A stretch of DNA of 64,000 nt from Antechinus flavipes (lineage: Eukaryota), in contig NC_067401.1 in the NCBI RefSeq assembly GCF_016432865.1, positions 38,254,001 through 38,318,000 of the forward strand, read 5' to 3'. The notes beneath the pieces were generated by a model. It saw only the letters and a list, made by a program, of their open reading frames with translations, searched no databases and had not been told where the DNA came from. Of the stretch, positions 38,812 through 64,000 are shown piece after piece. Position numbers and translations under genes: made by a program. The stretch's first letter is position 1, and the number at the start of each line of letters is the position of its first letter.

Positions 38812-38949
38812 NNNNNNNNNNNNNNNNNNNNNNNNNNNNNNNNNNNNNNNNNNNNNNNNNNNNNNNNNNNNNNNNNNNNNNNNNNNNNNNNNNNNNNNNN
38901 NNNNNNNNNNNNNNNNNNNNNNNNNNNNNNNNNNNNNNNNNNNNNNNNN
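38812..38949. other. Assembly gap (138 N)
   Basis: Run of N. Confidence 1.
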
Positions 38950-49800: not shown

Positions 49801-50599
49801 TCAAGATTTCATCTCGTATAGGGCTCTGAGGGAAGCCAGAATACAAAATGGTGAGAGAAATATGGAACCAAAGATAGAATAACTTGGACAGGTAATGATC
49901 ACAATAAGGGCAGGATGCAGGATTAGCCATAAAAACTCAGGAAACTACAGACCAATATGATTGATGACTATCATGAAAAAAATTAAGACCTTCCCAGAAA
50001 AAAAAGATATTGGCTATATTTAGATGAAACATGATTTATATCCCGTCCAAATAACCACTTCAAGACTCTTGATATCCATTATTTATCATGGGCTTTCTGT
50101 TCCACCCTGCAAATCAAATCCTCTGTACCAATTTTCTGCTATTTGATTTAGTAATCATAATCAGTTCGATACTACCATTATTTCTGGTAAAGTCATGTCA
50201 GGAAAATTCCTATGGTTCCACTTGACATCTCTGTGACCCAGATCCTGATGCCCTTCCCTGGCCTTAACACCCCTTTACATATTGTTTCCTCTTTTCTGAC
50301 TAGAAGCTGACTTAGGGCAGATGCTGTTTTGTTGTTGTATTTATGTAACAAACAGAATGTTTTTCATTTATTCATTGAGGTGAACTTGAAACTGTCATGA
50401 CCCATTTCCAATTCTAAATTCTGTAATCCTATAATCCTATGGCCCCTGCCTTCAGCAAATGTATGAAGCTCACAGAGGTTCTTGTGTAAAACACCCTAAA
50501 ACAATGATAGATGGGAGCTAATTTTGGCTCAAATTGGGGAGCTCCTAATGTAATCATGATGAGTAGGTGAGGAGCAGTTAGCTTAGTTAATATTGTTGG

Positions 50600-50730
50600 T
50601 GACAAGGGTGGAGAAAGAGGGGTGGCGCTGGGTTTGGTTGAGAATGAATCAGGCCATCCCACAGAAAGGGAGTCACCACCCTGAGATGGATGATTAGACC
50701 CAGTATAAGAAGCCCAGTATCCCAGACAGT
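50600..50730 (+). promoter_or_regulatory. Proximal promoter of SFTP gene 2: TGAATCA 50645-50651, CACCC box, TATAAGA 50704-50710
   Basis: Collinear paralog of the gene 1 promoter; TGAATCA-to-TATA spacing is 59 nt in both. Confidence 0.75.
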
Positions 50731-50732
50731 TG

Positions 50733-50785
50733 ATACCCTGCAAGTTGCTTCTATCTCCATCCTCTTTGTTCCTTTGGTGAACAAG
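50733..50785 (+). other. Non-coding exon 1 of SFTP gene 2 (start site inferred)
   Basis: gataccctgcaagttgcttctatctccatcct...ggtgaacaag|gtaagtgag, nearly identical to gene 1 exon 1; donor GT at 50786. Confidence 0.75.
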
Positions 50786-51485
50786 GTAAGTGAGGACTTC
50801 TTCAGTCTTGCTACGACTACAGGCATTTAGTGTGGTAACAGGCATAAATCTAGGGAATGGGGTGATTAGAACAGGAACCCTGAACTGGTACCAGAAGAGC
50901 AGGGTTCAGATTATAGCTCTTCCCCTTAATAGCTGTGTAACCTTGGGTAGCTAGGTGGCACCATAGTATACAGAATACTAGGGCTAGAGTCAGGAAGACC
51001 TGCATTCAAATTTGACTTTAGGCACTTACTAACCATGTAACTCTGGGCAAGTCACTTAACCACTATTCTCCTTATCTGTAAAGTGAGGGTAGGGAACAAC
51101 ATGATCTCTAAGGTGCTTTCCAGCACTCCTCTGTTAGGATGCCTATAGAGGCCTATAAGAGCATCTGGCAGTTTTGTTTTCCCCTCCCTTTAAGGCCATC
51201 ATCAGGATAAGAGTAGGTTTTGCTTCCAGTCCTGTCTTTCAAGACTTCCTATGGGACCTTGGAGCTTAAGTCTCTAGGACTGAGTGTTTTATTGTATTGA
51301 TGAAGAAGAATTTCCCTGCTCTACCTTTCCCCATGACACAGTTCAAAGGGAAAACAGATAAGATGGGAAATAAGTTCAAGAATGTTATTGTAGAAAATTG
51401 TCACTTGAAGCCCCTTAAAGAATATAAAAAATGGCAGTAAAGGGTTATGTTTTCTCCCTCCAGGTCAATTAAATTGTGCACCAAG

Positions 51486-51617
51486 ATGTCTCATCTCTTG
51501 GCAAGCATCTCCACCATCATGGATGTTTTCTACCAATATTGTGACCAAGACGAGGACACAATGAGCCAAAGTGCACTGAAGGAATTTCTGGAGAATGAGC
51601 TGCAATGTATTCTGAAG
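51486..51617 (+). CDS. SFTP gene 2 (hornerin/filaggrin-2-like), coding exon 2: N-terminal S100 half
   Basis: Acceptor ctccctccag| at 51463, ATG at 51486, 44 codons MSHLLASISTIMDVFYQYCDQDEDTMSQSALKEFLENELQCILK, donor aag|gtgag at 51618. Confidence 0.92.
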
Positions 51618-51739
51618 GTGAGTTTTCTATTAAATGCAATGGGCTGGGACAAAAGGCAGGTGTATTTTCTTTTATTTGGTATTTTTCATATTCAGCCATT
51701 CCTAAAAAGAGGGAGCCAGGTGGTATAGTAGATAGAGTA

Positions 51740-52000
51740 CAGGAGAGAGGAAGTTCTTATTGTTGTGGTTGAATGATTTTCCAATAGTGCCAAAACCTTA
51801 GTGACCCCATTTGGGGTTTTCTTGGCAAAGATACTAGTTCATCATTTCCTTCTCCAGCTCATTTGACAGATGAAAAAACTGAGACGAACAAGGGTAAATG
51901 ACTTACCCAAAATCACATAGTTGATAAGTGTCTGAGGCCAGATTTAAATTCAGGGACTCCACACAAGAGGAGGAGTGCTCTATCCACTGCTCTACCTACT
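51740..52000 (-). mobile_element. Mar1-like marsupial SINE in intron 2 of gene 2 (absent from gene 1)
   Basis: 'gaccccatttggggttttcttggcaaagatac...catttccttctccagctcatttgacagatgaaaaaactgag...gacttacccaaaatcacatag'. Confidence 0.75.
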
Positions 52001-52670
52001 TCCCTGAGAGGGAGGGAAAACTGAGGTCAAACTCTACTTCAGACATTTACTAGCTGTGTGATCCTGAGCAAGCTACTTAACAAGTCTCAGCTTCAGTCTT
52101 TTTTATCTGTAAAATGGGAGAGAATAGCATCTCCCTTATAGGAGTATTGGGATACACATATATCTATATGTGTATATTCAGAAAGAACATATATAAAGTG
52201 CTTTGCACTCTCAAAGAAGTATATAAAATCCTAGTTAACACTTGCTTCTAATTAGTAGGAAGCAAAAAAATTCACATAATCAATATTCCATCTGAGTCCT
52301 GTAAAGAGCATTCTAAAATTAAATACAGCAATGATAATATCTGATGTTTAGTGAGGTAATAGATAATGAGCCAGCCTTGAACCCCAAAATCTGTATCCAA
52401 TTCCTCACTAATACATATAAGCTGTGTGATCCTAGACAAATCACATAACTTCTAAGTACTAAAAGCAACTAAGACTATGTATGTACCAATCTCTGTATTG
52501 GTAGAGGAGACGATAGTCTACCTATTCATTGAAAGCACACATTCTGGAGAACTAATTGGTGGAATAGATAGAGCAAAGGCCCTATAGTCAGAAGGACCTG
52601 AGTTCAAAGCCGTTCTCAAATATTTACTAGCTGTGTGACCCTCGACAAGTCATTTAATCATGATTGCCTC

Positions 52671-52810
52671 TGAAAGGAAGGAAGGAAAGAGGGAAGAAGG
52701 GAAGAAGGGAGGGAAGGAATGAGGAAAGGAGAGAGGGAGTGAGAGAGGAAAAAGGGGAGGAAGGAAGGAAATAAGAAAAGGAAGGAGGAAGGAAAAAGGG
52801 GAAGCAAGAA
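52671..52810 (+). repeat. Purine-rich (GGAA/GAGG) low-complexity tract, probably a SINE tail
   Basis: About 140 nt of almost pure G/A directly after a short core-SINE (~52555-52670). Confidence 0.85.
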
Positions 52811-53188
52811 AAACACATTCAGTAGTTTTCAAAGGGCAATAAAAAGATGAAGAGGAAAGTCAATCATATTTGTTGATTGGTGATTCCCAAAGACTTAATA
52901 CAAATTTAACCTATTGTTTCTGTTGAAATTATCATACTTCCATAAATAGTGTCTTATATACATTCATTCTCTTGCTCAACAGAATTCCCCCCTGATAACT
53001 AATGCTATTTGTTCCCTAAATATGACTGTCTACTGACAATGAACAGAGTAAGAGCAGGGTAGCAGGGACTAATTAGAGTCCATCTAGGTACAACTACATG
53101 CACCAGTGGCTAACACACCTTCATTTATTGGGGATGTAGTAATTTCAGATTCATTGGAGGTGTTTTTGCATCTTGCTTTTTTGTACAG

Positions 53189-56100
53189 AATCCAGGAGAT
53201 GCTGATACTGTGGATGTCTTCATGCTTAATATGGATCATGATCGTAACAGAAGAATAGATTTTACTGAGTTTTTGTTGATGATATTCAAGCTGACAATGG
53301 CATTCAACAAAACCTTCAAAGAAGAGTATTGTCATCATCATCATGAGGATCAGACTGAAGAAGAGGAAGAAGAACAAAAGGGGGGAGAAGCAGATGGACT
53401 GAAAAAAAGAAAAAATGAATCTAGGAAAAAGGCCCATCAGCAGCTTCTGAAGAAGGAGAAAGTCTCAGTAACCCTCAGTCCTCAAGCACAGGGAAATATA
53501 GTTCTGGCTCAGGCTCTGGCTCCAGACAGTCATCTAGCTCTGGTCAACATGGGTCAAGATCAGACCACTCATCAAGCAATAGAGGTCATGGATCTAATGT
53601 AGGTCAAGGTCATAGTTCCCATTCCCAGCAGTCCTCCAGCTCTGGCCAACATGGCTCACACTCAGATTCTGACTCAGAATCTGGCTCAGGTCAAACTTCA
53701 AGCTCTAAGCACCAGGGGTCTAGATCAGATCATTCCAGCTCTGGAAGACATGGTTCCAGAATCACTCATTCCTCCTCTCAGAGAAGACATAGGTCCAGCT
53801 CAGGTGAACAATCTGAAACTTCTCAAGATCAAGGACATAGTTCTAGCTCCCATCAATCCTCCAGCTCAGGGAAACATGGCTCTGGCTCCATCTCAGGCTC
53901 AGGTTCTGGCTCTGGCTCACAGTCATCTAGCTCAAAAAAACATGGCTCAAGCTCAGATTCTGGCTCTGGCTCCAGGCAATCATCTAGCTCTGGTCAATAT
54001 GGATCAAGATCAGATCATTCATCAAGCAACAGGGGTCATGGATCTACTGGAGGTCAAAGGCATAGTTCCCATACCCAGCAGTCCTCCAGCTCTGGCCAAC
54101 ATGGCTCACATTCAGATTCTGGCTCAGGCTCTAACTCTGCCTCTGAATTTGATTCAGAATGTGTCTCAGGTCAGTCCTCAAGCTCTAGGAAACAGGGTTC
54201 AAGATCAGGCCATTCCTCTAGGTCTGAGAGACATGATTCAGGCTCAGCTCAATCCTCTCAGAGAAGACACAGGTCCAGCTCAGGTGAGCAATCTGGAATT
54301 TCTCAAGACCGAGGACATAGTTCCCATCAGTCCTCTAGCTCTGGGAAACATGGCTCTGGTTCAGGCTCAGGCTCAGGCTCTAGGCAGTCATCTAGCTCTG
54401 GTCAACATGGGTCAAGATCAGACCACTCATCAAGCAATAGAGGTCATGGATCTAATGTAGGTCAAGGTCATAGTTCCCATTCCCAGCAGTCCTCCAGCTC
54501 TGGCCAACATGGCTCACACTCAGATTCTGACTCAGAATCTGGCTCAGGTCAAACTTCAAGCTCTAAGCACCAGGGGTCTAGATCAGATCATTCCAGCTCT
54601 GGAAGACATGGTTCCAGAATCACTCATTCCTCCTCTCAGAGAAGACATAGGTCCAGCTCAGGTGAACAATCTGAAACTTCTCAAGATCAAGGACATCGTT
54701 CCAGCTCCCATCAATCCTCCAGCTCAGGGAAACATGGCTCTGGCTCCATCTCAGGCTCAGGTTCTGGCTCTGGCTCACAGTCATCTAGCTCAAAAAAACA
54801 TGGCTCAAGCTCAGATTCTGGCTCTGGCTCCAGACAATCATCTAGCTCTGGTCAATATGGATCAAGATCAGATCACTCATCAAGCAAAAGGGGTCATGGA
54901 TCTAATGTAGATCAAGATCATAGTTCCCATTCCCAAAAATCCTCCATCTCTGGATCAGGTCAGGTCTCCTCTCAGAGAAAACATAGGTCTAACTCAGGTG
55001 AAGAATCAGGAAACCAGGGTTGTAGGGTAATTAGTTTCAGCTCCATTCAGCCTTCAAGTTCCAAGAATAATGGCTCTGACACTGCGGCAGGCTTTGGCCA
55101 GTCCTCTAGCACTAGTCAGTATGGCTCAGGATTAGGTCAGTCATCTACTAGAAAGGGACATGGATCTGGTTCACATGGCAAGATAGGTATTCCCATAGGA
55201 GAGGGGCAGAGTTCCAGTTCCCAGCAGTCTTCTGGCTCTGGCCAACATGGCTCATACTCAGATTCTGGCTCTGGCTCTAGGCAGTCATCTAGCTCTGGTC
55301 AACATGGGTCAAGATCAGATCATTCATCAAGCAATAGGGGTCATGGATCTAATATAGGTCAAGGTCACAGTTCCGGTTCCCAGCAGTCCTCCAGCTCTGG
55401 CCAACATGGCTCACAGTCAGATTCTGACTCAGAATATGGCTCAGATCAAGCTTCAAGCTCTAAGCGCCAGGGGTCTAGATCAGACCATTCTTCCAGGTCT
55501 GGGAAACACCAATCAGGCTCAGGTCACTCCTCCTCTCAGAGAAGTCATAGGTCCAGCTCAGGTGAGCAATCTGGAACTTCCCAAGATCAAGGACATAGTT
55601 CCAGCTCCCATCAGTCTTCTAGTTCTGGGAAACATGGCTCTGGTTCAGGTTCAGGCTCAGGCTCTGGCTCCAGACAGTCATCTAGCTCTGGTCAATATGG
55701 GTCAAGATCAGATCATTCATCAAGCAACAGGGGTCATGGATCTACTGGAGGTCAAAGGCATAGTTCCCATACCCAGCAGTCCTCCAGCTCAGGCCAACAT
55801 GGCTCACACTCAGATTCTGGCTCAGGCTCTAACTCTGCCTCTGAATCTGACTCAGAATATGACTCAGAATATGGCTCAGGTCAGTCCTCAAACTCTAGGC
55901 AACAGGGTTCAAGATCAGGCCATTCCTCCAGGTCTGGGAGACATGACTCAGGCTCAGCTCAATCTTCCTCTCAGAGAAGACACAGGTCCAGCTCAGGTGA
56001 GCAATCTGGAATTTCTCAAGATCGAGGACATAGTTCCCATCAGTCCTCTAGCTCTGGGAAACATGGCTCTGGTTCAGGCTCAGGCTCAGGCTCAGGCTCT

Positions 56101-56757
56101 AGGCAGTCATCTAGCTCTGGTCAACATGGGTCAAGATCAGATTACTCCTCAAGCAATAGGGGTCATGGATCTAATGTAGGTCAAGGTCATAGTTCCCATT
56201 CCCAGAAGTCCTCCAGCTCTGGCCAACATGGCTCACACTCAGATTCTGGCTCAGAATCTGGCTCAGGTCAAACTTCAAGCTCTAAGCACCAAGGGTCTAG
56301 ATCAGATCATTCCAGCTCTGGAAGACATGGTTCCAGAATCACTCATTCCTCCTCTCAGAGAAGACATAGGTCCAGCTCAGGTGAACAATCTGAAACTTCT
56401 CAAGATCAAGGACATCGTTCCAGCTCCCATCAGTCCTCCAGCTCAGGAAAACATGGCTCTAGCTCCAGCTCAGGCTCTGGCTCCAGGCAGTCCTCTAGCT
56501 CAGGAAAATATGGATCAGACTCTGGCTCTGGCTCTGGCTCTGGCTCCAAACAGTCCTCTACCTCTGGCCAATATGGATCAGATTCAGGTCAGTCATCAAG
56601 CAACAGGGGTCATGGAATTAGTCCACGTGACAAGATAGGTGTTGCTACAGGTGAAGGTCATAGATCCCATACTCAGCAGTCTTCCAGCTCTGGGCAACAT
56701 GCCTCTGAACATGGCTCAGATCAGCTTTCTCTGAAGAGAAAGCAGCAATATTTCTAA
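53189..56757 (+). CDS. SFTP gene 2, coding exon 3: EF-hand, short spacer, ~4 diverged Ser/Gly/His/Gln/Asp repeats. One -1 frameshift at ~53423-53437 (error or recent pseudogenisation)
   Basis: Acceptor ttgtacag|53189. Reads [42 protein letters not shown] translated the Ser/Gly frame by hand from 53425 to ...GSDQLSLKRKQQYF-TAA (56755-56757) and found no stop. Uncorrected, the S100 frame ends at TAG 53600-53602. Confidence 0.8.
53527..56700 (+). repeat. Diverged coding tandem repeats of gene 2 (~820-900-bp period with half-unit substructure)
   Basis: The anchor cagtcatctagctctggtcaacatgggtcaagatcaga occurs at 53527, 54385, 55282 and 56104 (intervals 858, 897, 822). Confidence 0.9.
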
Positions 56758-57831
56758 GAGTAGCCACATTCTAGTCCTAAAGGATCCATGTTCTCCCTCT
56801 TTTAATTAATCAGATTTGGTGGCCTATATCCTATACCTCCGTGATTCTTCTTTGATATATGGATCCACTTATGGGAGAGATCTATTCATTTTTTTGCTTT
56901 GCCTTTTTGACAATTATATGACCTGAGCCTATCATAACACTTTTTTTCTGGGGTTAGAGAAATCCTTTTTAAAATTCTTCTGTTCTATGTAGAATTTTAT
57001 GCTTTTCTTCCTATTTGCTTTTGATTTCTTTTAGCTATATCATTTAGTAATATAGCTTGTTGTTTACTTGATTAGCTAATCAAGAGGGGAATAAATGAAA
57101 GAAGGTAAACACAGTCAGGGATTGATTGGAAAGCCAAATTAGGAAGTGTTTGGGGTATTTGGTATAACAATGGCACTTTTCTTCATTTGAGAACTTGACT
57201 TATGAAACACCTTTGTGATTGTGAATTGATATTATGGGCAATCAATAATCTCTAAGGAGCTAAAAGATAGTTGAATAGATTCCTGGTCTTTAATTGCAAA
57301 ATCATACTTCCAGTCCTATGTTCCAGATAGAATGCTATACTGTGGGAATAAGTATTAAGATTATAAAAGCAGGGAAGCATCTTCAGTACTTTTGAAGTTC
57401 ACAATGGTGATAAAACCCTGATTCCTTAGAGTATTTTCATAAGAAAACCAACAATCTTTAAGAGAATTTGGAATTATGCCCTTCTCCCTCAGAAACAGAT
57501 GAAAAGAGGTAGTTGAGAGGTAGTAATGTCTCCCATTTTGATCCAAAGAGCAAAATTATGGGCACTAACAACATTAAAGAATGTGCATTTAGAAACTATT
57601 GTAAATTTGAAATCTAGGGAATAATTTCTTCAACTTCTGACTTTAGACTACCTCGTCCTTTCACCAAACGTTACACTTAAGAGAATGGTATCTATGAGGA
57701 GAAGGGAAGAGAAAATGTACATTATTATTGTGAAGCTCTTATAATTGGCTATAATAAATTCAAGATTATTGACTCTTAATTGTTATAGGACATTTGATAA
57801 ATTTTTAAAATTGAATTTCAACATAATTAAC

Positions 57832-57837
57832 AATAAA
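57832..57837 (+). terminator. Probable polyadenylation signal of gene 2 (AATAAA)
   Basis: Lies in a block homologous to 35930-36560, followed by tgtgtatcttctctg. Confidence 0.65.
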
Positions 57838-58404
57838 CAATTGATTATCAAATAATATGATGTGTATCTTCTCTGCTTCAAAATAATAGTCAAAAAATAT
57901 TGATTCTGTCCAACTGTGGAAAATAAAAGTTGGAAAACTGGAGGAGTGCAAAGCAATACCAGGTAGCTAGTTATAAGACATGAGTCATGATCTTCCAGAG
58001 AGAAAGGTCATGAAAAAATTCATCTAAGAGTAATTTTTTTCACACATAATATAGTACATACATGTATCCAAATGGGTCCGCACATTACTCAGCTGCAGGA
58101 TACTTAGCCTTGGGGACATTTGCAGCAGAGGAAGAGAGAAAAGACAAAGAATGAGAAGGCAAAAAGCAATTTTTAAAAAAAGAAATAAAACTCACAAGCA
58201 TAAAAAAATGAATAAAAATTCATGGAAGACAGGAAACATATAACATGTGTCTGTGTTTGTATGCATATGTACATATACATATTATATGTGTATGTATAAT
58301 GAAAAATTAACCCAAAATTGCCGATGAACAAAAGATATAGCTGTAGCTTCCCTAAAAATCATCATAAAAGAGTAAGATAATCTAGTATTGTTCCAAGTAG
58401 AACA

Positions 58405-58758: not shown

Positions 58759-61700
58759 GGGACTTCTGGCCAAGATGGTGGAGAGGAGGCACACATCTCC
58801 ATAAGCTCCGCGTTTTCTCTCAAAATTCATTTCATGACAAGCCTCTGAATTAATGCTTGACTGAAAAAAAAAACCCACAAATAATTACCAAGAGAGGATA
58901 TCCTTGAAATTTGCCAGGAAAGATCTGTTTTTGCTGGAGGGCAAGGATGGTTTTAGATCAGGCACAGGCTGAGAGCAGGCAGCAGCAGCGAGAGCAGGGT
59001 AGGCAGTTCACAGCTGAGCAGACCAGAATGGGGTGGAGTGTGATCTCAACTGTCTCTGCGGGGAGAGCTTTGGTACAGGATTGGATACTTTGCCCTGGCA
59101 GCAAGCCAGTAGACAAGCAGAGAAGCTAAAAACACAAGGGGTAAAGAATACAACCCTGAAAAGCTACAGTCTCTCAGGACCTGGCTACCCCTCCCCCACA
59201 GTGTCTCAGCATGCCCGCCCCCCCCCCAAAAAAAGCAGATTCTATTTGTTTTTCTTTTCTTTTTTTCTTTGCTAGTTTGTCTTTGGTTCTTCTCTGACAA
59301 AATGAACAATCTAGCAGCATCCACATTAAAGGATCAAAGGGCCTGGAATATGATATTGCAAAAGGCTAAGGAACTTGGTATGGAACCAAAAATAACTTAC
59401 CCAACCAGAATGAGTATCTTTTTCCAGGGAAGAAGATGGACATTTGATGAAATAAGTGAATTTCACCTATTCTTGATGAAAAAAATCACAACAAACAAAA
59501 GTTTGATCTACAATTATAGAACTCAAGAGAAACCTAAAAAGGTAAAAAGAAATCTTGGGAACTATATTTCTGCTATAAAGATATATAAAGAACACACGTA
59601 TACTTTGTTCTAGAAACTAGAGGTGGAAAGGAAATTGTATCAGAAAAAGGGTAAAGTGGGGATACTACATCTCATGAAGAGGCAAAGGAAACCTATTATA
59701 TCTGAGAGAAAGAATGGAGGGGGATGAATATAGTGTGTATATTACTGCCATCAGAATTGGCTTAAAGAGAAAAATTTTAGACATATTTGATTTATGATGA
59801 AACTTCTCCCACCTCATTGAAAAGTGGGAAGGGAAAAGTGAAAAGGGAAGGAATAAGCTAAGCGGAAGGGAATACGAAAACTGGGAGGGAAAGGGGTAAG
59901 ATAGGGGGAAGAACTCTAAGGTGAGAGGGGGAGGGATACTAAAAAGGGAGGGCTGTGAGAAGCAAGTGGTGCTCACAACTTTAATACTGGGGAGGGGGTT
60001 ATGGGGGAATGAAGGGAGAAAAGGATAAACAGGGGTTAACAAGAGGGCAAGTAATACAGAATTGGTCATTTTAACCATAATTGTGAATGGGGTAAACTCC
60101 CCCATAAAGAGGAAGCAGTTAGCAGAATGGATGAAAAGCCAGAATCCTACAATATGTTGTTTACAGGAAACACACCTGAAGCGGGGAGATACATGCAGAG
60201 TAAAGGAAAAAGGTTGGAGCAGAATCTACTATGCTTTAGGTGAAGTCAAAAAAGCGGGGGTAGCCATCCTGATCTCAGATCAAGCTAAAGCAAAAATTGA
60301 TCTAATTAAAAGAGATAAGGAAGGGCACTATATCTTGCTAAAGGGTAGCATAGATAATGAAGCAATATCAATATTAAACATATATGCACCAAATGGTGTA
60401 GCATCTAAATTCTTAAAAGAGAAATTAAAAGAGCTGTAAGAAGAAATAGACAGCAAAACTATAATAGTGGGAGATCTCAACCTTGCACTCTCAGAATTAG
60501 ATAAATCAAACCACAAAATAAATAAGAAAGAAGTCAAAGAGATAAATAGAATACTAGAAAACTGGATCTCTGGAGAAAACTAAATGGAGACAGAGAGGAG
60601 TACACTTTCTTCTCAACAATTCATGGAACCTATACAAAAATTGACCATATATTAGGATATAAAAACTTCCAACTCAAATGCAGTAAGGCAGAAATGGTAA
60701 ATGCATCTTTTTCAGACCATGATGCAGTGAAAATTACATTCAACAAAAAGCCAGAGGGAAACAGACCAAAAAATAATTGGAAACTAAATAATCTCATACT
60801 AAAGAATGATTGGGTGAAACAGCAAATCATAGACATAATTAATAACTTCACCCAAGAAAATGACAATAATGAGATGTCATACCAAAATGTGTGGGATGCA
60901 GTCAAGCAGTAATAAGGGGAAATATCTTTATATTCTTTATAGCCTTATTTTCATAAAATAGAGAAAGAGAAGGTCGATGAATTGGGCTTGCAACTAAAAA
61001 TGCTAGAAAAGGAACAAATTAAAAACCCCCAATCAAACACTAAACTTGAAATTCTAAAAATAAAAGGAGAGATTAATAAAATTGAAAGTAAACAAACTAT
61101 TGGATTAATTAATAAAATGAAGAGTTGGTTCTATGAAAAAACCAACAAAATAGACAAACCCTTAGTACATCTGATTTTAAAAAGGAAAGAAGAAAATCAA
61201 ATTGTTAGTCTTAAAAATGAAAAGGGAAAACTCGCCACTAACAAAGAGGAAATTAGAGCAATAATTAGGAATTACTTTGCCCAACTTTATGCCAATAAAT
61301 TTGACAACTTAAATGAAATGGAAGAATACCTTCAAAAATATAGTTTGCCCAGATTAACAGAGGAAGAAGTAAATGGACTAAACAGTACCATTTTAGAAAA
61401 AGAAATAGAACAAGCTATTTACCAACTCCCTAAGAAAAAATCCCCAGGACCAGATGGATTTACATGTGAATTCTACCAAACATTTAAAGAACAATTAATT
61501 CCAATACTATATAAACTATTTGAAAAAATAGGGATTGAAGGAGTCCTACCAAACTCCTTTTACGACACAGACATGGTACTGATACCTAAACCAGGTAGGT
61601 CAAAACCAGAGAAAGAAAATTGTAGACCAATCTCCCTAATGAATATTGATGCTAAAATCTTAAATAAAATATTAGCAAAAAGATTACAGAAAATCATCTG

Positions 61701-64000
61701 TTGGAATCCTTACAAAGTGTCAAGTTGTTAGAATTGATAGAGACAATAATTATCTAATTTAGCGTGGTTCACTATGATTGATTTGATCTTACAAGGAGAT
61801 GTTATGGGCCAGAAGAAACAAGGTACTAAGTGGAACTGAGAAACAATGCTTGTGTTCACACCTTTAGAGTGTTCATATAAGCAAGAAGATTTTAGGGCCA
61901 GAGGAAACCCATAATCCCATTCTCAGATCCCACAATCCCACTCTCTTGGAGAAGGAGCATAGAGATTCAGTGAGCCAGTTAAGGAAGTTCAGCTGAAAAG
62001 ATTGAGAGGGGAGCATCAAGTCAGTTCAGAGCCAGAAGCCCTCTCTGGGAGGCAAGAGAGATTCATTCCATCTTCCATCTTGGTGCTGGCTGGAGGCTGA
62101 AGAAAGCAGAAGCAGAAGAAAAGGATAAAGCTGCAAGAGCTCTTAGAACCAAGGAGAGAGAGAGGCCTCTAAGAAAGCTAACCAGGCTTGGAAAGAGATA
62201 AGAAATAAACATTTGCATTCTATCTGCTGGCTGTATTTGAAGTGATTATTACTTTTAACTGAAACTAAGGCTGCTTCCAGATAACCTCCCCAAGAAACCT
62301 GTTCCCAGAGAGAAGTATTTTATTTTAAAGAAGAAAAACACTGCAATCATCCCCAGGATAACATACTATGACCAAGTAGGATTTATACCAAGAATGCAGG
62401 GCTGGTTCAATATTAGGAAAACTATTAGCATAATTGACTATATCAATAACCAAACTAATAAAAGCCATATGGTCATCTCAATAGATGGAGGAAAAGCATT
62501 TGACAAAATCCAACATCCATTCCTAAGAAAAAACACTTGAGAGGATAGGAATAAATGGACTTTTCCTTAAAATAGTCAGGACCATATATTTAAAACCGTC
62601 AGTAAGCATCATATGCAATGGGGAAAAACTGGAAGCGTTCCCAGTAAGATCTGGAGTGAAGCAAGGTTGCCCCCATCACCATTATTATTCAATATTGTAT
62701 TAGAAACACTAGCCTCGGCAATAAGAGTTGAGAAAGAGATTAAAGGAATTAGAGTAGGTAATGAGGAAACCTAACTATCACTCTTTGCAGATGATATGAT
62801 GGTATCCTTAGAGAACCCCAGAGATTCTGCTAAAAAGCTATTAGAAATAATTCATAACTTTAGCAAAGTTGCAGGGTACAAAATAAATCCCCATAAATCC
62901 TCAGCATTTTTATATATCATCAACAAAAGCCAACAGCAAGAGATACAAAGAGAAATTCCATTCAAAATAACTGTTGATAACATAAAATATTTGGGAATCT
63001 AGCTACCAAAGGAAAGTCAGGAATTATATGAGCAAAACTACAAAAATCTTTCCACACAAATAAAGTCAGATTTAAATAATTGGAAAAATATTAAGTGCTC
63101 TTGGATAGGCTGAGCAAATATAATAAAGATGGCAATACTCCCTAAACTAATCTATTTATTTAGTGCTATATCAATCAGACAATGATCTAGAAAAAATAAC
63201 AACAAAATTCATATGGAAGAACAGAAGGTCTAGAATCTCAAGGGAATTAATGAAAAAAAAAAAAAAGACAAATGAAGGTGGCCTAGCTGTACCTGATCTA
63301 AAACTATATTATAAAGCAGCAAGTATACCAATATGATGGTATACTTAGAGAACCCCAGAGATTCTACTAAAAAGCTATTAGAAATAATTCATAACTTTAG
63401 CAAAGTTACAGGGTACAAAATAAATCCCCAAAAATCCTCAGCATTTTTATACATCACCAACAAAATCCAATGGCAAAAAATCAAGCCATTCTCCAAGTGA
63501 TAAATGGTCAAAGGATATGAAGACAATTTTCAGATAATGAAATTAAAATTATTTCTAGCCATATGAAAAAATGCTCCAAGTCATTATTAATCAGAGAAAT
63601 GCAAATTAAGACAATTCTGAGATACCACTACATACCTGTCAGATTGGCTAAGATGACAGGAAAAAATAATGATGAATGGTGGAGGGGATGTAGGAAAACT
63701 GGGACACTGATGCATTGTTGGTGGAGTTGTGAATGAATCCAACCATTCTGCAATTATGCCCCAAAAGTTATCAAACTGTGCATACCCTTTGATCCAGCAG
63801 TGCTACTATTGGGCTTATATCCCAAAGAAATACTAAAGAAGGGCAAGGGATCTGTATGTGCCAAAATGCTTGTGGCAGCCCTGTTTGTAGTGGCTAAAAA
63901 CTGGAAAATGAATGGATGCTCATCAATTGGAGAATGGTTGGGTAAATTGTGGTATATGAATGTTATGGAATATTATTGTTCTGTAAGAAATGACCAACAG
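58759..64000 (+). mobile_element. Large decayed marsupial L1: 5'UTR, internally deleted ORF1, disrupted ORF2 (EN and RT); runs off the window
   Basis: 5' end gggacttctggccaagatgg. ORF1 C-terminus QRAWNMILQKAKELGMEPKITYPTRMSIFF. Endonuclease VNGVNSPIKRK...CCLQETHLK. RT region [35 protein letters not shown] and ctctttgcagatgatatg (LFADDM). Multiple stops and frameshifts. Confidence 0.95.
61699..62345 (+). mobile_element. Solo ERV LTR (647 bp) inserted in L1 ORF2
   Basis: TG...CA ends (tgttgg...actgca), perfect 6-bp TSD ATCATC (61693-61698 and 62346-62351), internal TATA-like catataag (~61875) and AATAAA (62204-62209). Removing it rejoins L1 ORF2 (KRLQKII|PR...YDQVGF). Confidence 0.88.

What the first reader, a model, noticed from the sequence alone, without database searches (positions are those of the whole stretch)
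50704..57837. A second, hidden SFTP paralog: a 3.3-kb stop-free repeat frame cut off from its S100 domain by one base
Seen: the promoter, three exons with canonical splice sites and the poly(A) signal are all present. The S100 frame drifts into the 'LAQALA' frame and stops at 53602 (181 aa). The Ser/Gly frame is open from 53425 to TAA 56757 across diverged repeats, but has no start codon, so the ORF track misses it. Alignment with gene 1 (aatgaatatgtaagaaagaaccattca vs aatgaatctaggaaaaaggcccat-ca) and a TAG at 53422 confine the missing base to ~53423-53437, which includes an A5/GG/CCC run. Adding one base gives ~1,233 aa. Inference: an intact gene with a homopolymer error, or a very young pseudogene; either way likely mis-annotated automatically.
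Basis: partly seen in the sequence, partly recalled or inferred. Interest (0 to 1): 0.75.

Follow-up and report, generated by a model that had tools for sequence, protein, structure and literature searches.

The report
Frame-broken hornerin-like skin gene, antechinus
The window holds a real second filaggrin/hornerin-type skin-barrier gene of the yellow-footed antechinus whose calcium-binding head is cut off from its 1,110-codon repeat body by one base, and I could not tell a very young real mutation from an assembly error because the read check was lost.

Summary
The window is Antechinus flavipes assembly GCA_016432865.2, chromosome CM028220.1. Gene 2 has a TATA box, three exons with canonical splice sites and a poly(A) signal shared with gene 1. 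Its S100 frame stops at 53600-53602, giving 181 aa. A Ser/Gly/His/Gln frame runs stop-free from 53425 to TAA 56755-56757 and has no start codon. One added base would give 1,233 codons.

The repeat units differ mostly at third codon positions. dN/dS is 0.16-0.42 (0.29-0.64 for the divergent unit U4), and every indel between units is a multiple of three. So the repeat frame was selected as coding until very recently. If the break is real, it is at most a few million years old.

New here: gene 2 alone, among about 38 S100 fused-type proteins compared, has a first EF-hand loop two residues short and lacks its conserved Glu.

Real or error is undecided. My estimate is about 0.50 for a real young or segregating 1-base deletion and 0.42 for an assembly consensus error. 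The assembly is PacBio CLR with one Pilon round, and neighbouring gene 1 shows three same-direction 1-base gaps.

This is an ordinary kind of gene. The scan had already noted gene 1 in this same window.

The parts
50704..50709 (+). TATA box variant TATAAG (gene 1 has TATAAAAG), inside a promoter block that is mostly identical to gene 1's
50733..50785 (+). Non-coding exon 1. The start is inferred at about 25-30 bases after the TATA box; the donor is AAG|gtaagt
   Evidence: homology with gene 1 exon 1
51464..51617 (+). Exon 2 with ATG at 51486 and 44 codons. It encodes the first (pseudo) EF-hand of the S100 domain, with a 6-base deletion and Glu>Ala in the loop
   Evidence: Pfam S_100 E=1.2e-11; alignments
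53189..53602 (+). Start of exon 3 in the S100 frame: an intact canonical EF-hand 2, a short His/Glu/Lys-rich linker, then an out-of-frame tail ending at TAG 53600-53602
53423..53457 (+). Zone that must hold the net -1 frame break. The most parsimonious place is CAT|CA at 53435-53439. The A5 run lies at 53426-53430
   Evidence: codon comparison with gene 1 and P0001
53425..56757 (+). Ser/Gly/His/Gln repeat frame: 1,110 open codons plus TAA and no start codon
53530..56535 (+). Seven repeat units of 393-450 bases (U1-U7). U1 and U3 are 99.3% identical. U4 (54838-55284) is a divergent unit that resembles the C-terminal tail
57832..57837 (+). AATAAA poly(A) signal in a block shared with gene 1's 3' end

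Best explanation
Gene 2 is a genuine S100 fused-type protein gene of the hornerin/filaggrin-2 group and a tandem paralog of the giant gene 1 in the antechinus epidermal differentiation complex. Its repeat domain was kept as coding sequence by selection until very recently. I take the break to be most likely a real one-base deletion in the linker, at 53425-53457 and probably TT>T at 53437. It would be at most a few million years old and possibly still a segregating null allele, like the common human FLG null alleles. This haplotype would then make a 181-aa S100-only product from a last-exon stop, which should escape nonsense-mediated decay, and the 3.3-kb repeat frame would be untranslated.

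Shown: the gene anatomy, the frame break, the selection signature and the EF-hand 1 lesions. Inferred: that the break exists in the animal's DNA, how old it is, and what product results.
For: The break lies in sequence that is unique within the window, about 90 bases before the repeats begin, and the longest homopolymer in the allowed zone is only A5. Here 100-base polishing reads should map and correct a consensus error (assembly method: PMC9290055).

Gene 2's S100 head shows relaxed constraint. It is the only one of about 38 family members with a 12-residue instead of 14-residue first loop, and the only one lacking the Glu of the xxELK motif. By hand count from the alignment, exon 2 differs from gene 1 by 7 nonsynonymous changes, 2 synonymous changes and a 6-base deletion. 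Against the outgroups P0001 and P0002, most of the derived changes are on gene 2's side.

The TATA box is altered. Loss-of-function alleles and pseudogenes are common in this family: platypus has 2 pseudogenes (PMC10791643), and common human FLG loss-of-function alleles are described in the abstract of PMC5174745. Earlier follow-ups on this assembly reported several unique-sequence frameshifts as real. Those are leads only.
Against: No reads were seen. The assembly is PacBio CLR with canu correction, wtdbg2 and a single Pilon round, and such a consensus is prone to one-base deletions. Gene 1, 15 kb upstream, shows three one-base frame jumps in the same direction.

Apart from this one base, gene 2 looks fully functional. 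The repeat frame has 0 stops in 1,110 codons and offers 544 single-substitution routes to a stop, which gives a mean wait of 1.8-5.5 My to the first one. All inter-unit indels are multiples of three and dN/dS is 0.16-0.42. Splice sites, ATG and poly(A) signal are intact. A real lesion must therefore be very recent, which has a small prior.
Confidence: 0.5

Rival explanations
1. Assembly consensus error. The animal's gene is intact and encodes a protein of about 1,233 aa: an S100 head, a short linker, seven Ser/Gly/His/Gln repeats and a tail. One base was dropped from the long-read consensus and polishing did not restore it.
For: The assembly is CLR with wtdbg2 and one Pilon round. Gene 1 has three same-direction one-base gaps. 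The specialists' paper warns that SFTP exon 3 is generally prone to sequencing and assembly error (PMC10791643). Everything else in gene 2 is intact and under purifying selection, and the -1 shift is the only indel in the gene that is not a multiple of three. Other unchecked notes list single-base gaps in conserved genes of this assembly (leads only).
Against: Gene 1's gaps sit in GGCTCN microsatellite context inside near-identical 915-base repeats that short reads cannot polish. Gene 2's break is in unique sequence with at most an A5 run. The reported BUSCO score of 92.4% equals that of the Illumina-based A. stuartii assemblies, so residual coding frameshifts are not rampant, though BUSCO is a blunt measure. 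The EF-hand 1 lesions show the head is not under normal constraint.
Confidence: 0.42
2. An older pseudogene whose repeat frame stays open by chance, by recent internal duplication, or by gene conversion from a functional paralog outside the window.
For: U1 and U3 are 99.3% identical, so part of the array is very young. The 5' end (promoter to exon 2) is far more similar to gene 1 than the 3' UTR (70%) or the exon 3 S100 part (65% at protein level). That suggests conversion in this locus.
Against: Most units are diverged (dS 0.12-0.5), yet they differ mainly at third codon positions (44 variable columns against 17 and 20 of 125 each), and all their indels are multiples of three. The repeats are only about 50% identical in protein to gene 1's, so gene 1 is not the donor.
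Confidence: 0.05
3. The break is real and is bypassed, either by -1 ribosomal frameshifting on G_AAA_AAG (53425-53431) or by a cryptic acceptor at ctag|G (53424/53425). The locus would then yield both a short S100 protein and a repeat-bearing protein.
For: The only place where a -1 slip could enter the open repeat frame, just after the TAG, carries a lysine-codon slippery-like heptamer. The AG of that TAG would also put exon 2 in phase with the repeat frame (read directly from the sequence).
Against: The 136 bases downstream fold no better than shuffles (z = -0.11). The P-site codon would mispair after the slip. The putative acceptor is preceded by an A-rich tract rather than a pyrimidine tract.
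Confidence: 0.02

Closest known systems
Gene 1 of this window (NCBI XP_051852475.1, 'filaggrin-2-like', Antechinus flavipes)
   Same: The promoter, exon 1 and exon 2 are mostly identical in sequence. Both have the same three-exon plan, the same phase-0 exon 2/3 junction, homologous linker blocks, a homologous 3' UTR and the same poly(A) signal. Both have Ser/Gly/His/Gln repeats.
   Different: Gene 1 has about 25 near-identical 915-base repeats in a 26-kb exon. Gene 2 has seven diverged units of 393-450 bases in 3.3 kb. Gene 2 has a linker about 330 bases shorter, a first EF-hand loop two residues shorter, and repeats only about 50% identical in protein.
Wombat 'filaggrin-2-like' proteins XP_027717525.1 and XP_027718303.1 (P0001, P0048)
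   Same: These are the best matches to gene 2's exon 3 S100 part (75% identity), closer than gene 1 (65%). The EYxHxHHED motif after the domain is shared.
   Different: They have the full 14-residue first loop with Glu and a long linker. The wombat models are themselves short (302 and 317 aa). No wombat DNA could be fetched.
Opossum FLG2, FLG, HRNR and HRNR-like 1-3 cluster (PMC10791643)
   Same: Tandem lineage-specific hornerin-like S100 fused-type genes in a marsupial epidermal differentiation complex. Several are listed as predicted differently by GenBank.
   Different: One-to-one orthology to gene 2 was not tested, because no opossum sequence was available here.
Human FLG loss-of-function alleles
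   Same: They would be the model for a real break: frameshift or nonsense alleles in the last, repeat-bearing exon of an S100 fused-type gene, common in populations (abstract of PMC5174745; details from general knowledge).
   Different: Human null alleles lie inside the repeats and leave the head plus some repeats. Here the break precedes all repeats.

Membership tests
S100 fused-type proteins (SFTP; filaggrin/hornerin group) | N-terminal S100 domain with two EF-hands, split between exons 2 and 3 | tested here: met
   Exon 2 matches Pfam S_100 at E=1.2e-11, above the cut-off. Exon 3 has all the conserved EF-hand 2 residues (DxDxNxxxDxxE). Caveat: the first loop is 12 residues instead of 14 and lacks its Glu.
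S100 fused-type proteins (SFTP; filaggrin/hornerin group) | Three exons: non-coding exon 1, start codon in exon 2, one large last exon | tested here: met
   Canonical GT/AG at all junctions, at positions homologous to gene 1. There is no RNA evidence.
S100 fused-type proteins (SFTP; filaggrin/hornerin group) | Long low-complexity repeat domain in the same reading frame as the S100 domain | tested here: not met
   As assembled, the repeat frame is offset by one base and the S100 frame stops after 181 aa. Whether this holds in the animal is undecided.
S100 fused-type proteins (SFTP; filaggrin/hornerin group) | Location in the SFTP cluster of the epidermal differentiation complex | tested here: met
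   Gene 2 lies 15 kb downstream of another SFTP gene on the same strand. The wider locus was not inspected.
S100 fused-type proteins (SFTP; filaggrin/hornerin group) | Expression in differentiating keratinocytes and processing or cross-linking of the repeats | not testable with these tools
   No RNA run held the stretch. The genome paper's main text never mentions skin.
Processed or unitary pseudogene | Several disabling lesions and neutral substitution pattern | tested here: not met
   There is a single frame break. The repeat frame has 0 stops, third-position-biased differences and only 3n indels. Only exon 2 looks neutral.

The most novel reading that the evidence does not exclude
The break is real and fixed, and the locus is read in two frames. 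It would make a short S100-only protein by default and, through a -1 slip on G_AAA_AAG just after the TAG at 53422-53424, a full S100-plus-repeat protein. That would explain why the repeat frame still looks selected. No stimulatory RNA structure supports this reading.
Probability: 0.02. Interest if true: 0.8.

Novelty: new member of a known kind. Interest (0 to 1): 0.3.

Why it matters
If the break is an assembly error, antechinus has an extra intact hornerin-like skin-barrier gene that no protein catalogue searched here contains, and the reference needs a one-base fix. If it is real, this would be a filaggrin-family gene caught within at most a few million years of losing its repeat body, possibly as a segregating null allele in a wild marsupial. 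That would be a natural parallel to human FLG null alleles. Either outcome is a modest contribution to a family already known for lineage-specific gain, loss and mis-annotation.

Tried and rejected
- **Word searches.** The repeat frame, whole and as residues 1-70, found nothing. The S100-frame piece found only placental proteins at 65-73% identity.
- **Representatives search.** The best hits were wombat, an unnamed UniParc entry and gene 1, with no ortholog of gene 2.
- **Fetching contigs.** P0002 is not on record. No DNA is held for the wombat P0001. Two window ORFs next to the break are not on record. So no independent contig or orthologous site could be read.
- **Global alignment.** A global MAFFT alignment of the two linkers misplaced gene 2's linker. 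The local alignment was used instead.
- **Frameshift-stimulating fold.** None was found.
- **Spliced model.** The joined exon 2 plus exon 3 model was not sent to any search tool; the exons were searched apart. In one search the two exon peptides were set side by side only inside a local alignment script. One search repeats the exon 3 part alone.
Full report
**Identity of the window.** The best antechinus hit of the protein search, P0003, is NCBI XP_051852475.1, 'filaggrin-2-like [Antechinus flavipes]'. Its locus, on GCA_016432865.2 chromosome CM028220.1, is identical to the window over all 20,187 overlapping bases. The window therefore comes from the published yellow-footed antechinus assembly. 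That assembly used 100x PacBio reads, canu correction, wtdbg2, and one Pilon round with 50x 100-base BGISEQ reads (PMC9290055).

**Anatomy of gene 2.**
- TATAAG lies at 50704-50709, inside a promoter block that is mostly identical to gene 1's.
- Exon 1 ends at 50785 (AAG|gtaagt).
- Exon 2 spans 51464-51617, with ATG at 51486 and 44 codons, and ends in phase 0.
- Exon 3 starts at 53189 after tttgtacag.
- AATAAA at 57832-57837 lies in a block shared with gene 1's 3' end.
- Exon 2 matches Pfam S_100 at E=1.2e-11. Exon 3 carries an intact canonical EF-hand.
- Only two S100 exon 2 copies exist in the window. L1 remnants follow at 59-62 kb.

**The break.**
- The S100 frame stops at TAG 53600-53602, giving 181 aa.
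- The frame one base back is open from 53425 to TAA 56755-56757, which is 1,110 codons. It is 39% Ser, 17% Gly, 10% Gln and 9% His, and TAG 53422-53424 bounds it upstream.
- It has 0 stops, against 11 and 92 in the other two frames and about 50 in shuffles.
- A local alignment with gene 1 (9575-9643 against 53393-53463) is significant: score 43 against 21.3 +/- 3.2 for shuffles. It begins in the S100 frame and ends in the repeat frame of both genes, with a net length difference of +2.
- The break therefore lies between 53423 and about 53457.
- Codon by codon, gene 2's NESRKKAH matches gene 1's NEYVRKNH in the S100 frame. Gene 2's SAASEEGES matches gene 1's SVTFEEESE and wombat's SVTFEGEEE in the repeat frame. 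The two readings share T 53437. The most parsimonious lesion is therefore CATTCA to CATCA rather than loss of an A from the A5 run. At this divergence that is a preference, not a proof.

**Was the repeat frame selected?** I cut the array into seven units (U1-U7, 393-450 bases).
- Pairwise dN/dS in the Ser/Gly frame is 0.16-0.42 for the ordinary units, at dS of 0.02-0.5. It is 0.29-0.64 for pairs with the divergent unit U4.
- In a frame-agnostic DNA alignment, variable columns fall 17, 20 and 44 on codon positions 1, 2 and 3 (125 columns each).
- Every gap run between units is a multiple of three. Hexamer microsatellites would favour that to some degree, so this is weaker than it looks.
- The frame offers 544 single-substitution routes to a stop. 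At 1-3e-9 substitutions per site per year the mean wait to the first stop is 1.8-5.5 My, and less once indels are counted.

The repeat body was therefore coding until very recently. A real break would be young.

**Signs that gene 2 is not pristine.**
- Of about 38 family N-termini compared, gene 2 alone has a first EF-hand loop two residues short, and it alone lacks the Glu of the xxELK motif.
- By hand count from the alignment, exon 2 differs from gene 1 by seven nonsynonymous changes, two synonymous changes and the 6-base deletion. Against the outgroups, most derived changes are on gene 2's side.
- About 330 bases of linker are absent relative to gene 1.
- The TATA box carries an extra G.
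- EF-hand 2 is intact.

These lesions show relaxed constraint on the head. They do not show that the gene is dead.

**Real or error?** The decisive test was lost. The look-up of sequencing runs listed DNA runs of several related organisms that hold the stretch. No other tool gave an independent copy of the locus.

- *For an error:* the assembly method is prone to one-base deletions. Gene 1 changes frame three times by one base in the same direction, near 12850, 31100 and 32440. The specialists' paper warns about SFTP exon 3.
- *Against an error:* gene 1's gaps sit in GGCTCN microsatellite context inside 915-base near-identical repeats that 100-base reads cannot polish. Gene 2's break is in unique sequence with at most an A5 run, about 90 bases before the repeats. 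BUSCO completeness equals that of the Illumina-based A. stuartii assemblies.
- *Earlier notes of this scan cut both ways:* several unique-sequence frameshifts in this assembly were reported as real, while other single-base gaps in conserved genes remain unchecked. I treat these as leads only.

My estimate is 0.50 for a real young or segregating deletion, 0.42 for an assembly error, 0.05 for an older pseudogene kept open by duplication or conversion, and 0.02 for a bypass by frameshifting or a cryptic acceptor. No supporting RNA fold was found for a bypass. The remaining 0.01 is for anything else.

**Comparison with what is known.** Tandem hornerin-like S100 fused-type genes are described for the opossum (FLG2, FLG, HRNR, HRNR-like 1-3). 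Disrupted copies occur in platypus, and several opossum genes are listed as predicted differently by GenBank (PMC10791643). Gene 2 is a new member of that known kind. No protein matching it was found at the lengths searched. NCBI's model for its neighbour gene 1 is a 365-aa mis-model followed by a separate 2,934-aa model that starts inside the repeats. This makes mis-annotation or non-annotation of gene 2 plausible, but I did not see it directly.

**Verdict.** The kind is ordinary and the interest modest.

Noticed in passing
window 12778-12901, 30696-31182, 32366-33011: Gene 1's Ser/Gly frame jumps by one base three times, always in the same direction. Two jumps share the identical context GGCTCCGGCTC-GGCTCTGG, where other repeat copies read GGCTCCGGCTCTGGCTCTGG. 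The third is GGCTCCGTTCC against GGCTCCAGTTCC. They are probably consensus errors in repeats that short reads cannot polish.
   Followed up: partly
window 7331-10187 and from 11193 (L001 10001-12857 and 13863 onward): NCBI models gene 1 as a 365-aa 'filaggrin-2-like' protein (XP_051852475.1) that leaves the Ser/Gly frame, followed by a separate 2,934-aa model starting inside the repeats. The giant gene is split in the annotation.
   Followed up: partly
window 51540-51575: Gene 2's first EF-hand loop lacks two codons (GAA TAT in gene 1) and has Ala where about 38 other family members have the calcium-binding Glu. This recalls S100 proteins that have lost calcium binding in the first site.
   Followed up: yes
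window 6200-7480 against 50500-51630; 35604-36216 against 57369-57998: Similarity between genes 1 and 2 is mosaic. The promoter, exon 1 and exon 2 are mostly identical. The 3' UTR is about 70% identical, and the exon 3 S100 part is 65% identical in protein, less than to the wombat relative (75%). This suggests gene conversion of the 5' end between older paralogs.
   Followed up: partly
window 54838-55284: Repeat unit U4 is divergent, with Cys, Phe and Ile residues. It resembles the C-terminal tail ([18 protein letters not shown] against KIGVATGEGHRSHTQQSS), as if an internal duplication had once included the tail without its stop.
   Followed up: partly
window 38812-38949: An assembly gap (run of N) lies between the two genes. 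I did not touch it.
   Followed up: no
window 59113-59610 and 60943-61728: Two open stretches downstream of gene 2 are L1 remnants, with weak Pfam matches to the L1 dsRBD-like domain and to reverse transcriptase.
   Followed up: yes
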